Part shown: one piece after another, positions 60,980 through 64,000 of the stretch
Position numbering within the stretch: the first letter of the stretch is position 1
Layout of the letters: each line of letters starts with the position of its first letter
NCBI RefSeq assembly: GCF_006345805.1
Contig: NC_042997.1
Location: 204,600,001-204,664,000 of the forward strand
DNA length: 64,000 nucleotides
Direction of reading: 5' to 3'
DNA from: Octopus sinensis
Taxonomy: Eukaryota
The notes under the pieces: model-generated
Told to the model about the DNA's origin: nothing
Database searches by the model: none
What the model saw: the letters and a program-made list of their open reading frames with translations, nothing else
Position numbers and translations under genes: made by a program

Positions 60980-61176
60980 TATATATATATGTATAAAAAA
61001 AAGCACCCACTACACTCACAGAATGGTTGGCATAAGGAAGGGCATCCAGCCATAGAAACACTGCCAGATCAGACTGGAGCCTGGTGCAGCCTCCTGGCTT
61101 CCCAGACCCCGGTCAAACTGTCCAACCCATGCTAGCATGGAAAACAGACGTTAAACAGTGATGATGATGATATAAG

Positions 61177-61184
<8 letters not shown>

Positions 61185-61235
<51 letters not shown>

Positions 61236-61350
61236 GTGTGTGTGTGTATATATATATATATGTGTTTGTGTATATATATATATGTGTGTGTATATATATA
61301 TATATGTGTGTGTGTGTATATATATATATGTGTGTGTGTGTGTATATATA

Positions 61351-61383
<33 letters not shown>

Positions 61384-61547
61384 GTGTGTGTGTATATATA
61401 TATATATGTGTGTGTATATATATATATGTGTGTGTGTATATATATATATATATGTGTGTGTGTGTATATATATATATATGTGTGTATATATATATATATA
61501 TTGTGTGTGTGTATATATATATATGTGTGTGTGTGTATATATATATG
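61185..61547. repeat. Alternating (TA)n(TG)n microsatellite
   Basis: Read directly. Confidence 0.95.
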
Positions 61548-61550
61548 TCA

Positions 61551-61642
61551 GCCTGCATAGCGCAGTCGGTAGAGCATCAGACTTTTAAGAACTGTCAAGT
61601 GATGAAATCTGGGGGTCGCGGGTTCAAGTTCCTCTGCGGGTG
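61551..61642 (+). tRNA. tRNA-Lys(UUU) gene or pseudogene with a 19-nt canonical intron (61588-61606)
   Basis: Cloverleaf GCCTGCA TA GCGC AGTCGGTA GAGC A TCAGA CT TTT A [intron] A TCTGG GGGTC GCGGG TTCAAGT TCCTC TGCGGGT G. Close to the metazoan tRNA-Lys(UUU). Defects: one D-stem mismatch, one T-stem mismatch, and U at position 61. No CCA and no adjacent T-run terminator. Confidence 0.85.
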
Positions 61643-63506
61643 ACTAGAGCCAGGGCAAATAATATACTGGATCTCTGCTTCACAAACAATATGGACATTA
61701 TCCATAATGTTAAAGTGATGCCGACATTGGTCTCGCATCACAACATAATAAAGCTGTCTATGTATGGACCAAAAGCATCCGCAGACACACAGCCTATATG
61801 AAGCATCCACAATCTCTCCAAACTAAACTTTCATAAAGCAAATTGGAAGTTGATTGAGAAAGAGATCCTCAAACAGGATTGGCCTAAATGTCTTTCCACA
61901 CTAGACATTGACATGACACACAAACGTTTCATGTCCATAATACAAGCCATATGTGACAAATATGTCTCAGTGTGCAGGGCCAGCACACACAAAAACAGGA
62001 TCCCTAGAGAAAGGAAGATTCTTATGAGACGACGAACAAGGATTGCGAACTGCCTGATCAAGCACACCAAAAGTGGTGAGACGTCTCACCTCGAGAGAAT
62101 GCTAATGGAAATTGAGAAAAGTCTGCACCAGTCTTATGAAAAGGAGAGAGCAGATAAAGAAGCTTGGGTAATAAAGAATATCAAGTCAAACCCTAAAGCT
62201 TTCTTTAAGTTTGCCAAAGAGATAGCCACAGTGCGCCAGAGGATAGGACTTCTCTTCCAAAAAGATGGCTCCCTCACAGGAAATCCCACGAGGATAAGTA
62301 AAATACTGAACGAACAGTTCCAAAGTGTATTCACTACACCTCTAGGACACAAGCAAGTAAACAACCCAGAAGAATTCTTTGCCACTTTACCTGTAGTCAA
62401 AGTGGCAAAAATTGAGTACATCAACATTGAAGATGATGATATCACACTGGCCATAAATGACACAAACGATTGACACAAACTCAGCTGCGTGACCTGATGG
62501 ATTTCCAGTGATCCTTCTCAAATCATGCAAACGAGCCCTTGCAAAACTGCTACAGCTTCTTTTTCAGCGCTTTCTTGCAAGTGGTAAGCTCCCAGTCAAA
62601 TTGAAAGAAGGGATAATATGCCCTATCCATAAGGGAAGAAGCAGAGCAGATGCTAAAAAATTATAGGTCTATCTCTCTGACCTCACACATCAGCAAAGTC
62701 ATGGAACGAATAGTCTGCAAGAAGCTAATCATGTTCCTTGAAGAAAATGACTTGCTGACTGACACCCAGCATGGATTTCGACCAGGTAGAAGCTGTCTAA
62801 CACAGCTCCTGCAACACTATGGCTGGGTGTTAAAACAGCTACTAAATGGCTCAAGTGTGATTGTGATATATCTCGACTTTGCAAAAGCCTTTGATAAAGT
62901 CGACCATGGTATGATCTGTCACAAACTGCATGATCTCGGCATAGGCAGAAAACTTGGAGAGTGGCTGCACAACTTCCTAAAAGATAGAAGGTAGGCAGTT
63001 GTGGCCAATGGAGCCACCTCCAAGGAAACACAAATAACAAGCGGTGTTTCACAGGGCACTGTCTTGGGGCCACTGCTGTTCATAGTGGCCCTTTCAGATA
63101 TGCCCTCAGTTGCAAAGATGGCCACCCTTGCTATCTATGCAGATGACACAAAGTTACCCCAACGGCAGAGTGGGGCGCCACTGCATGGTGCCAAAGATCC
63201 CAACATCACCATCAAAATACAGGTTCAGATACTGCAACAGCTTGGGTTTCAGGGGACCACAGCTCTTCAATATACTTCATAAATGCCTGAGAGACCTGCA
63301 TGGTGTGGATGTGGATTTCTTTAAAACTAAACTGGTTCTCTTCTTGTCAGGGGTTCCAGATGAACCTACCTCTCAGCAGGAAACACAGAATGGGCAGTGG
63401 CATTGAACTCCCTTGTTGATCAAGTGCCACGTATCAGAGGTGGTTTCACATACTAGTGTAGCTCATTCAACGGTGGTGCCCCAGCATGGCCGCAGCCTTC
63501 AGGCTG
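61643..63506 (+). mobile_element. 5'-truncated, internally deleted APE-type LINE (CR1/jockey-group-like)
   Basis: In order: NNILDLCFTN...SHHNII (endonuclease end), NFHKANW, PDGFPVILLK, NYRSISLTSHISKVMERI, QHGFRPGRSC, YLDFAKAFDKVDH, SGVSQGTVLGPLLF, IYADDTK; then a deletion to RGPQLFN..VPDEP and the 3' stem-loop. Stops, frameshifts and a short duplication near 62458-62483. Confidence 0.9.
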
Positions 63507-63529
63507 TTATATTTTTAAGGATTTAAGGA

Positions 63530-63833
63530 TATGTGTATATATATATAAGTATATATATATAAGTATGTATATATATGTATATATATATGTAAGTATGTAT
63601 ATATATATATATATATATATGTCTGTATACATATAAGTATATATATATATATATGTGTGTATATATATAAGTATATATATGTGTATATATATATATAAGT
63701 ATATCTATATATGTGCATATATATATAAATATATGTGTATATATAAATACATATATGTATATATAAATATATATATATATATATATGAGTATATATATGT
63801 GTATGTATATATATATGTGTGTGTATGTGTATG

Positions 63834-63865
<32 letters not shown>

Positions 63866-64000
63866 ATATATATGAGTATATATATGCATGTGTGCATATA
63901 TATATGAGTATATATATGCATGTGTGCATATATATATGAGTATATATATGCATGTGTGCATATATATATATCAGTATATATATATACATGTGTGCATATA
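63530..64000. repeat. (TA)n-based compound microsatellite
   Basis: Read directly. Confidence 0.95.

What the first reader, a model, noticed from the sequence alone, without database searches (positions are those of the whole stretch)
61551..63506. Unspliced tRNA-Lys fused flush to a 5'-truncated LINE: possible tRNA-LINE chimera or SINE precursor
Seen: the tRNA ends at discriminator G61642, and the next base starts an in-frame LINE endonuclease remnant (TRARANNILDLCFTN). There is no CCA, the intron is retained, and there is no Pol III T-run until about 62550. Both sides of the composite are microsatellite. Established: snRNA-LINE chimeras (e.g. U6/L1) arise by template switching or RNA ligation, and tRNA SINEs are thought to originate as a tRNA promoter head plus a LINE 3' end. 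Inference: this may be a pre-tRNA/LINE chimeric retrocopy, or a Pol III-driven long non-autonomous element (an intermediate in SINE birth). The simpler alternative is a LINE inserted immediately 3' of a genomic tRNA gene.
Basis: partly seen in the sequence, partly recalled or inferred. Interest (0 to 1): 0.8.

Follow-up and report, generated by a model that had tools for sequence, protein, structure and literature searches.

The report
Pre-tRNA-Lys fused to truncated LINE retrocopy
A decayed copy of an unprocessed lysine pre-tRNA (short leader, intron and two trailer bases, no terminator) is joined head-to-tail to a 5'-truncated LINE inside a TA microsatellite; it is most likely a one-off by-product of the LINE reverse transcriptase switching templates, a process already known in mammals and fungi, and not a new mobile element.

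Summary
A 92-nt intron-bearing tRNA-Lys(UUU) copy sits at 61551-61642. A 5'-truncated LINE with an endonuclease and a reverse transcriptase domain follows, but its homology starts at 61648, not 61643. Between them lie AC, shared with the source genes' trailers, and 3 unassigned bases (TAG).

The tRNA comes from a family of at least 60 intron-bearing genes clustered on contig C6. Their flanks are conserved to at least -45 and +24, and all listed copies have a T-rich terminator. The window copy shares only about 6 leader bases and 2 trailer bases with them and has no terminator. What was copied is therefore the extent of the primary transcript, not a piece of DNA.

The "downstream microsatellite" starts as the LINE's own (TA)n tail. 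About half of the other truncated copies of this LINE abut TA repeats at their 5' edge. Here the TA repeat abuts the tRNA leader, not the LINE edge.

The junction is unique in the 2.7-Gb genome, and the tRNA part is decayed (38 against 59 bits). A T5 run that is present in all four aligned LINE copies would stop Pol III before the LINE tail.

Verdict: a single-event pre-tRNA/LINE chimeric retrocopy is the best reading (about 0.7). The SINE-precursor reading is not supported. This is a new member of a known kind.

The parts
61177..61544 (.). Upstream compound (TA)n(TG)n microsatellite, the presumed 5' part of the target site
   Evidence: TRF array 61177-61548, period 2/24. TA-run cover of the 40 nt before the leader is 0.55, against a window background in which only 4-7% of positions reach 0.35.
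61545..61550 (+). Remnant of the pre-tRNA 5' leader (ATGTCA). Only 3-6 nt can be assigned because ATG could also belong to the microsatellite.
   Evidence: Most C6 cluster genes have ..cgcATGTCA before position +1. Their conserved flank further upstream (ttcaaaagatttaatctatctaaatttt..) is absent in the window.
61551..61642 (+). Unspliced tRNA-Lys(UUU) pseudogene copy: exon 1 at 61551-61587, intron at 61588-61606 (19 nt, boundary ambiguous by 1), exon 2 at 61607-61642
   Evidence: ARAGORN. Rfam tRNA scores 38.2 bits here against 59 bits for intact genes. It differs from the nearest gene L032 (C6:34527852), which has an identical intron, by 5 substitutions within the tRNA.
61643..61644 (+). First two bases (AC) of the 3' trailer; the T-run terminator that follows in the source genes is missing
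   Evidence: Most C6 cluster trailers start with AC (ACGATTTTT, ACATATTATTTT, ACACAATTTT, ACGTTTT). All listed copies are T-rich within 18 nt.
61645..61647 (+). TAG: three junction bases that match neither partner (filler or non-templated addition)
   Evidence: LINE copies read ..CAACCA[A/G]CCAGGG at this point. No tRNA-Lys gene in the genome has the trailer ACTAG.
61648..63530 (+). 5'-truncated LINE body: last ~35 codons of the endonuclease domain, linker, partial reverse transcriptase, C-terminal region and short 3' UTR ending ..TTTAAGGATTTAAGGAT. The frame is broken by stops and frameshifts.
   Evidence: Alignment to three longer copies at 92-93.6% identity. Pfam RVT_1 and Exo_endo_phos_2. 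The 3' end is defined by 10 other copies.
63149..63154 (+). Site of a 597-bp internal deletion in the reverse transcriptase region, at an AAAGT microhomology
   Evidence: Alignment A4, columns 1531-2127.
62560..62564 (+). First T5 run downstream of the tRNA, a potential Pol III terminator about 970 nt before the LINE tail; present in all four aligned LINE copies
   Evidence: T-run scan; invariant CTTCTTTTTCAG in A4.
63531..64000 (+). (TA)n-rich tail of the LINE, merging into a long TA array that continues about 690 bp past the window end
   Evidence: Other copies carry (AT)n tails directly after ..AAGGAT. TRF arrays at 63536-63986 and L084:9-691.

Best explanation
This is a single-event chimeric retrocopy. 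A LINE whose 3' end is a (UA)n tail began target-primed reverse transcription at a nick in a genomic TA microsatellite. After copying about 2.4 kb of LINE RNA, up to the position that is now 61648, the reverse transcriptase left that template, possibly at a broken 5' end, and added or picked up 3 bases. It then continued on a nascent, unprocessed pre-tRNA-Lys(UUU) from the C6 gene cluster: 3'-shortened trailer, both exons, the intron and the 5' leader. It ran off at the transcript's 5' end, and the cDNA was joined to the upstream TA/TG repeat. The product is tRNA-head plus LINE-tail in sense orientation. It never amplified and has since decayed as neutral DNA.

Shown: the two parts, their boundaries, their source families, the uniqueness of the junction and the decay. 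Inferred: the order of events, template switching rather than RNA ligation, and a single event.
For: (1) Transcript-limited homology. Fourteen C6 paralogues share their upstream flank to at least -45 and their downstream flank to +24. The window shares only ATGTCA and AC with them.
(2) All listed family members with an intact 3' exon, and nearly all of the 100 listed of 189 looser matches (3 mismatches allowed), have T-rich terminators within 12-18 nt. The window copy has none, and ACTAG occurs nowhere else in the genome.
(3) The intron is retained and there is no CCA, so the template was a precursor and not a mature tRNA.
(4) The LINE part is a typical 5'-truncated copy ending in the family's own tail.
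(5) About half of 20 other truncated copies abut a TA microsatellite at their 5' edge, against 4-7% of positions in the window that reach the same TA cover. Here the TA repeat abuts the tRNA leader (cover 0.55), while the LINE's own 5' edge has cover 0.
(6) The ages are compatible: 2.8% private substitutions in the LINE part against 5 differences in the 92-nt tRNA (6 of 100 with the leader and AC).
(7) Other copies of this family show 5' inversions and fusions to other retroelement RNAs, which suggests a switch-prone enzyme.
(8) tRNA/LINE-1, U6/LINE-1 and 5S/LINE-1 chimeras made by template switching or ligation are documented (bioRxiv 10.1101/2025.02.02.635956; PMC4476161; PMC2104539).
Against: No target-site duplication can be read because both flanks are low-complexity TA repeats. 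No empty or orthologous site could be examined, as no related genome is available here. The local region is unusually TA-rich, which weakens the target-site argument (likelihood ratio only about 7). The age comparison rests on 5 substitutions. The 3 junction bases and the missing U-run require an assumed 3'-trimmed acceptor RNA or internal invasion. The junction was not checked against reads.
Confidence: 0.7

Rival explanations
1. Two successive events. An earlier retro-insertion left a solo pre-tRNA copy with a (TA)n tail, that is, an extremely truncated LINE event that switched to the pre-tRNA. A second LINE of the same family then integrated into that tail right next to the tRNA.
For: The family often sits in TA repeats, so a TA tail would attract a second insertion. 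The 'TA' inside ACTAGA could be a last repeat unit.
Against: The second element's 5' junction would have to fall within 1-3 nt of the tRNA trailer out of a tail of tens to hundreds of bp. The divergence of the two parts is compatible with one age. No solo tRNA-plus-(TA)n copies were seen among the listed dispersed copies.
Confidence: 0.12
2. Plain adjacency. A LINE inserted by chance into the 3' trailer of a resident, DNA-duplicated tRNA-Lys gene.
For: This is the simplest event on paper. The genome holds very many LINE copies and at least 189 tRNA-Lys-like 3' ends, so a few chance adjacencies are expected genome-wide.
Against: A DNA-level copy from the cluster should carry the conserved upstream flank, and the displaced GATTTTT.. 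trailer should reappear after the LINE. Instead the TA/TG repeat starts about 6 nt upstream of the tRNA, and TA repeat follows the LINE for more than 1 kb. The LINE's 5' edge does not lie in a TA target.
Confidence: 0.07
3. RNA ligation before reverse transcription. A pre-tRNA fragment with a 2',3'-cyclic phosphate end was ligated to a 5'-OH LINE RNA fragment (RtcB type, as proposed for U6/LINE-1), and the fused RNA was retrotransposed.
For: It gives the same final structure. RtcB-mediated ligation is listed among the known and proposed mechanisms for LINE-1 chimeras (10.1101/2025.02.02.635956, section 28). From general knowledge, RtcB is also the tRNA-splicing ligase.
Against: The junction lies in the trailer, not at an exon-intron boundary or at the RNase Z site where defined tRNA ends arise. 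Three extra bases at the junction fit non-templated addition by a reverse transcriptase better than ligation.
Confidence: 0.06
4. The composite is, or was, a Pol III-driven non-autonomous element: a nascent SINE transcribed from the tRNA promoter and mobilised through the LINE tail.
For: It has a tRNA head with A and B boxes, a LINE 3' tail and sense orientation, which is the textbook SINE blueprint.
Against: The junction is unique in 2.7 Gb. At 1.98 kb it is far longer than a SINE. The T5 at 62560, present in all four aligned LINE copies, would end Pol III transcripts about 970 nt before the tail. The last base of the B box is mutated and the tRNA score has dropped from 59 to 38 bits.
Confidence: 0.03
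5. Assembly artefact: a false join between a tRNA-containing read and a LINE-containing read.
For: The locus is surrounded by long microsatellites, which are hard to assemble.
Against: The join lies in unique, non-repetitive sequence, not in the microsatellites. The tRNA copy carries private substitutions found in no other copy, so it is not a cluster gene pasted in.
Confidence: 0.02

Closest known systems
U6/LINE-1 and other small-RNA/LINE-1 chimeric retrocopies of mammals (PMC4476161; 10.1101/2025.02.02.635956)
   Same: A Pol III transcript in sense orientation at the 5' end is fused directly to a 5'-truncated LINE that ends in its own tail. Each junction is a single copy. The events are attributed to template switching during target-primed reverse transcription, or to RNA ligation.
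   Different: Here the LINE is a single-ORF element with a (TA)n tail in a cephalopod, not L1 with poly(A). Target-site duplications cannot be read. The partner is a tRNA precursor, not U6.
tRNA/LINE-1 chimeras of primates (10.1101/2025.02.02.635956: 21 loci)
   Same: tRNA sequence and LINE sequence were inserted together in one event.
   Different: The primate cases are mostly tRNA halves (about 1-37 nt) in antisense orientation, ascribed to twin priming or self-priming. This one is full-length and sense-oriented, and it carries leader, intron and trailer, so it derives from the unprocessed primary transcript.
Chimeric retrogenes made by LINE template jumps in Magnaporthe grisea (PMC2104539)
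   Same: A non-mammalian LINE reverse transcriptase fuses copies of different cellular RNAs by template jumps.
   Different: The partner RNAs differ, and in the fungus some composites are multicopy.
tRNA-derived SINEs (tRNA head plus LINE-derived tail)
   Same: The order of modules is the same: tRNA-related promoter region followed by the 3' end of a partner LINE.
   Different: This composite is single-copy, 1.98 kb long, contains an internal Pol III terminator and is decayed. It resembles the proposed first step of SINE birth, not a SINE.
RTE-2_OV, the RTE-clade LINE of Octopus vulgaris (PMC9115989)
   Same: A single long ORF with endonuclease and reverse transcriptase, and a 3' UTR made up mostly of a microsatellite.
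   Different: Neither sequence identity to RTE-2_OV nor clade placement was tested here. [quoted passage not shown]

Membership tests
LINE-mediated chimeric retrocopy (template-switch type) | The 5' module is a copy of a cellular RNA limited to the transcript's extent, without promoter or terminator flanks | tested here: met
   Only ATGTCA and AC are shared with paralogues whose flanks are conserved to -45/+24; there is no T-run.
LINE-mediated chimeric retrocopy (template-switch type) | The 3' module is a 5'-truncated LINE in the same orientation, ending in the LINE's own 3' tail | tested here: met
   61648-63530 plus the (TA)n tail, aligned to longer copies and to 10 other 3' ends.
LINE-mediated chimeric retrocopy (template-switch type) | Direct junction with no more than a few extra or microhomologous bases | tested here: met
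   Three unassigned bases (TAG) lie between the trailer AC and the LINE.
LINE-mediated chimeric retrocopy (template-switch type) | The whole composite is flanked by one target-site duplication and the LINE's preferred target | tested here: inconclusive
   Both flanks are TA repeats, as for about half of the other copies. No duplication can be defined in low-complexity DNA.
LINE-mediated chimeric retrocopy (template-switch type) | An empty site lacking both modules in a related genome or haplotype | not testable with these tools
   No related genome is available (header).
tRNA-derived SINE | Many dispersed copies sharing the same head-body-tail junctions | tested here: not met
   The junction is unique with 0-3 mismatches allowed.
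tRNA-derived SINE | A Pol III transcript can reach the LINE-derived tail (no internal terminator) | tested here: not met
   T5 at 62560-62564, present in all four aligned LINE copies.
tRNA-derived SINE | Internal A and B box promoter | tested here: inconclusive
   The A box TAGCGCAGTCGG still fits the consensus. The B box reads GGTTCAAGTTC, with its last base changed. Activity was not tested.
Functional tRNA-Lys(UUU) gene | Intact cloverleaf, native flanks and a T-run terminator | tested here: not met
   38.2 against 59 bits; 5 private substitutions; no terminator; no conserved flanks.
RTE-clade LINE | A single ORF with an apurinic-type endonuclease and a reverse transcriptase, and a short 3' UTR ending in a simple repeat | tested here: met
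   Exo_endo_phos_2 and RVT_1 lie in successive frames of a copy broken by frameshifts (L082); (TA)n tail.
RTE-clade LINE | Phylogenetic placement of the reverse transcriptase within the RTE clade | not tested
   No reference set of LINE clades was available. The assignment rests on architecture and on PMC9115989.

The most novel reading that the evidence does not exclude
The locus may be a preserved instance of the first step of SINE birth: a LINE reverse transcriptase capturing a nascent, still unprocessed Pol III pre-tRNA and welding it to its own recognition tail. If this LINE family does so recurrently in octopus, whose genome is rich in SINEs, a genome-wide catalogue of such failed founders would make the template-switch model of SINE origin directly testable. 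It would also show that nuclear pre-tRNAs, not mature tRNAs, are the substrate.
Probability: 0.15. Interest if true: 0.65.

Novelty: new member of a known kind. Interest (0 to 1): 0.38.

Why it matters
Chimeric small-RNA/LINE retrocopies are well documented for mammalian L1 and for a fungal LINE. This locus extends the phenomenon to a cephalopod LINE with a microsatellite tail. It also shows an unusually informative partner: a full-length, sense-oriented tRNA precursor that still carries leader, intron and trailer. That places the template switch in the nucleus, on a nascent Pol III transcript. The product has the module order proposed for newborn tRNA-SINEs. As a single decayed locus it has no likely function. 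Its value is as a mechanistic footprint and as a search image for a genome-wide survey.

Tried and rejected
(1) Strong-stop or primer-tRNA origin, as in older models for tRNA-Lys SINEs. Rejected because there is no CCA and the intron, leader and trailer are present, so the template was not a mature tRNA.

(2) Pol III read-through from a master locus. Rejected because the junction is unique and a T5 present in all four aligned LINE copies lies inside.

(3) Target-site duplication. Both flanks are TA repeats, so nothing can be read.

(4) The two other dispersed Lys copies, L052 and L053, were examined as possible further chimeras. Both keep T-run terminators and are followed by unrelated sequence or a SINE, not a LINE.

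(5) A survey of LINE 5' ends with full-length copies. The supposed 5' terminus of L082 proved to be a truncation, and other copies extend further. No more genome DNA could be fetched, so the true full length and any ORF1 remain unknown.

(7) Rfam microRNA hits in the flanks (mir-297, mir-3149 and others) are all far below the gathering score and are low-complexity artefacts.

(8) Comparison of orthologous sites. Not possible because no related genome is held.

Full report
**The locus and the observation.** ARAGORN finds one tRNA in the window, at 61551-61642 on the + strand. Rfam's tRNA model scores it 38.2 bits, above the gathering score of 29. With the canonical intron position 37/38 it is a tRNA-Lys(UUU) with a 19-nt intron. 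ARAGORN's label 'tRNA-Stop (tta)' is an intron-placement artefact, which it repeats on intact family members. There is no CCA. T runs of 4 or more on the + strand occur only at 61583-86 (the anticodon loop itself), 62560-64 and 63512-16. Downstream, broken reading frames hit RVT_1 (E=1.5e-15 and 5e-5) and weakly the last 40 positions of Exo_endo_phos_2.

**Where the tRNA comes from.** A search of the window's own genome with 61545-61650 finds about 40 scored copies at 89-95% identity, intron included. Nearly all lie on contig C6 at 34.52-34.97 Mb. Pattern searches list about 55-60 copies with an identical 3' exon, on C6 and in a second cluster on C10, and 189 matches when 3 mismatches are allowed. 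All of the listed exact copies, and nearly all of the 100 looser matches that were listed, have a T4+ run or a T3-C-T3-type T-rich stretch within 12-18 nt of the discriminator. Intact genes score 59 bits.

The oriented table shows that most C6 paralogues share an upstream flank (ttcaaaagatttaatctatctaaattttcgttgaatcgcatgtca) to at least -45. They also share a downstream flank (acgatttttcttttggaaattgtc). The window copy shares only ATGTCA upstream and AC downstream. Further upstream it has (TA)n(TG)n, and downstream it has TAG followed by the LINE.

The nearest gene is L032 (C6:34527852), which has an identical intron. The window copy differs from it by 5 substitutions within the tRNA. Three are C>T changes, two of them at CpG. 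One weakens a T-stem pair and changes the last base of the B box. The copied unit therefore has the extent expected of a Pol III primary transcript: short leader, exon, intron, exon and the start of the trailer. It does not have the extent of a DNA segment.

**Where the LINE starts and ends.** A search with 61551-61760 returns the window plus 39 LINE copies at 94-98% identity, all of which begin to match at query position 98-102. In the alignment, 14 of 17 copies continue 5' with ..GCTGCAACCA[A/G]CCAGGGCAAATAAT. The window matches only from AGCCAGGG at 61648, the L002/L018 subtype. This leaves 61645-47 (TAG) unassigned. No tRNA-Lys gene in the genome has the trailer ACTAG.

The 3' end is defined by ten other copies..GCCGCAGCCTTCGGGCTGAAACATTTTTAAGGATTTAAGGAT followed by (AT)n of variable length and then unrelated flanks. 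Here it merges into a TA array of about 1.15 kb.

Against three longer copies the window element is 92-93.6% identical. It carries 49 private substitutions in 1730 comparable sites (2.8%), a 597-bp deletion after 63149 at an AAAGT microhomology, and a 7-bp insertion. A longer copy (L082) shows Exo_endo_phos_2 followed by RVT_1. The window's breakpoint lies about 35 codons before the end of the endonuclease domain. The architecture, one long ORF with a simple-repeat tail, resembles the RTE-clade LINE described in Octopus vulgaris (PMC9115989). Clade membership was not tested.

**Is the junction multicopy?** No. The 210-bp query, a 24-nt exact pattern and a 28-nt pattern with up to 3 mismatches each find only the window. 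With the T5 at 62560, which is present in all four aligned LINE copies, and the decayed tRNA, this removes support for an amplifying Pol III-driven element.

**Which edge is the integration edge?** I collected 20 other 5'-truncated copies. About half have a TA-rich microsatellite directly upstream: 6 of the 16 have TA-run cover of at least 0.35 in the last 40 nt, as do L082, L005, L024 and L026. Only 4-7% of positions in this window reach that cover. In the window, the 40 nt before the tRNA leader score 0.55 and the 40 nt before the LINE's own 5' edge score 0. The composite as a whole therefore sits in the family's preferred target, which favours insertion as one unit. The argument is modest (likelihood ratio about 7) because the neighbourhood is TA-rich. 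No target-site duplication can be read in such sequence.

**Mechanism.** The structure matches the known class of LINE-mediated chimeric retrocopies: U6/L1 (PMC4476161), diverse RNAs including tRNA (10.1101/2025.02.02.635956) and fungal LINE chimeras (PMC2104539). Reverse transcription starts on the LINE tail at a nicked TA repeat, proceeds about 2.4 kb, and then continues on a second RNA to its 5' end. The three extra bases fit non-templated addition at a template jump. The absence of the U-run implies an acceptor with a trimmed 3' end, or internal invasion. These steps are inferred.

RNA ligation before reverse transcription would give the same product. It is less attractive because the junction lies at no defined tRNA-processing site.

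A two-step history remains possible: a solo pre-tRNA retrocopy with a TA tail, later hit by a second LINE. It needs a coincidence of 1-3 nt. Plain insertion next to a DNA-duplicated gene is contradicted by the missing flanks and terminator.

Other copies of this family show inverted 5' segments (L073, L077), a fusion to a 63%-identical LINE (L074), and a SINE half fused at an AAAC microhomology without resuming downstream (L068). These would fit a switch-prone enzyme but were not followed up.

**Comparison and novelty.** The primate tRNA/LINE-1 chimeras are mostly tRNA halves in antisense orientation (10.1101/2025.02.02.635956). Here the partner is full-length, sense-oriented and unprocessed, and the LINE is a microsatellite-tailed element of a mollusc. 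This is a new member of a known kind. It has the module order of a tRNA-SINE but fails the defining SINE features that were tested: copy number and a transcript that can reach the tail. It is best described as a dead-end product of the reaction thought to found SINEs.

**Limits.** No related genome or reads were available. Genome DNA could not be fetched, so there is no genome-wide survey of such chimeras, and the LINE's full length remains undetermined.

Noticed in passing
G000 C6:34.52-34.97 Mb (loci L032-L060) and C10:21.96-22.05 Mb: There is a large tandem cluster of at least 60 intron-bearing tRNA-Lys(UUU) genes with flanks conserved to -45/+24. A second cluster has the same or a one-base-different 3' exon but different trailers (TA.., CAC..).
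   Followed up: partly
L052:1470-1640 (C16:14928930): A dispersed tRNA-Lys copy that keeps its terminator sits between a 19/20-matching inverted repeat (GCGAACGCCGTAGATATGGA ... TCCATATCTACGGCATTCGC). The origin of this arrangement is unknown.
   Followed up: no
L053:1380-1760 (C9:16683407): A dispersed tRNA-Lys copy with a terminator is wedged between the 3' end of one SINE copy and the 5' end of another.
   Followed up: no
L068 (C5:129640266 region), minus strand: The 3' half of a common SINE is fused to a 5'-truncated copy of the same LINE at an AAAC microhomology. The SINE does not resume after the LINE tail. This may be a second Pol III-RNA/LINE chimera.
   Followed up: partly
L074:557-1520 (C13:69427430 region): A segment of a different LINE family (63% identity) is joined in sense to this LINE at a position about 740 bp further 3' in the reference. 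This may be a LINE/LINE template-switch chimera.
   Followed up: no
L073:922-1059 and L077 (rc) 696-1345: Inverted segments of the same LINE lie directly 5' of truncated copies, as in twin priming.
   Followed up: no
window 63149-63154 and about 62460-62470: The LINE copy has a 597-bp internal deletion at an AAAGT microhomology and a 7-bp insertion (CACAAAC) relative to three other copies.
   Followed up: partly
window 61001-61170: A fragment of another interspersed repeat ending in (GAT)n lies between two TA arrays just upstream of the locus.
   Followed up: no
window 61188-61470 and 63571-64000: Rfam microRNA models (mir-297, mir-3149, mir-466 and others) hit the TA/TG repeats at 22-49 bits, against gathering scores of 75-101. 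These are low-complexity artefacts.
   Followed up: yes
window 61551-61642; L032, L035, L041: ARAGORN calls the intron-bearing Lys(UUU) genes 'tRNA-Stop (tta)' or 'Leu (taa)' because it places the intron one or two bases off. Automated annotation of this family could be misleading.
   Followed up: yes
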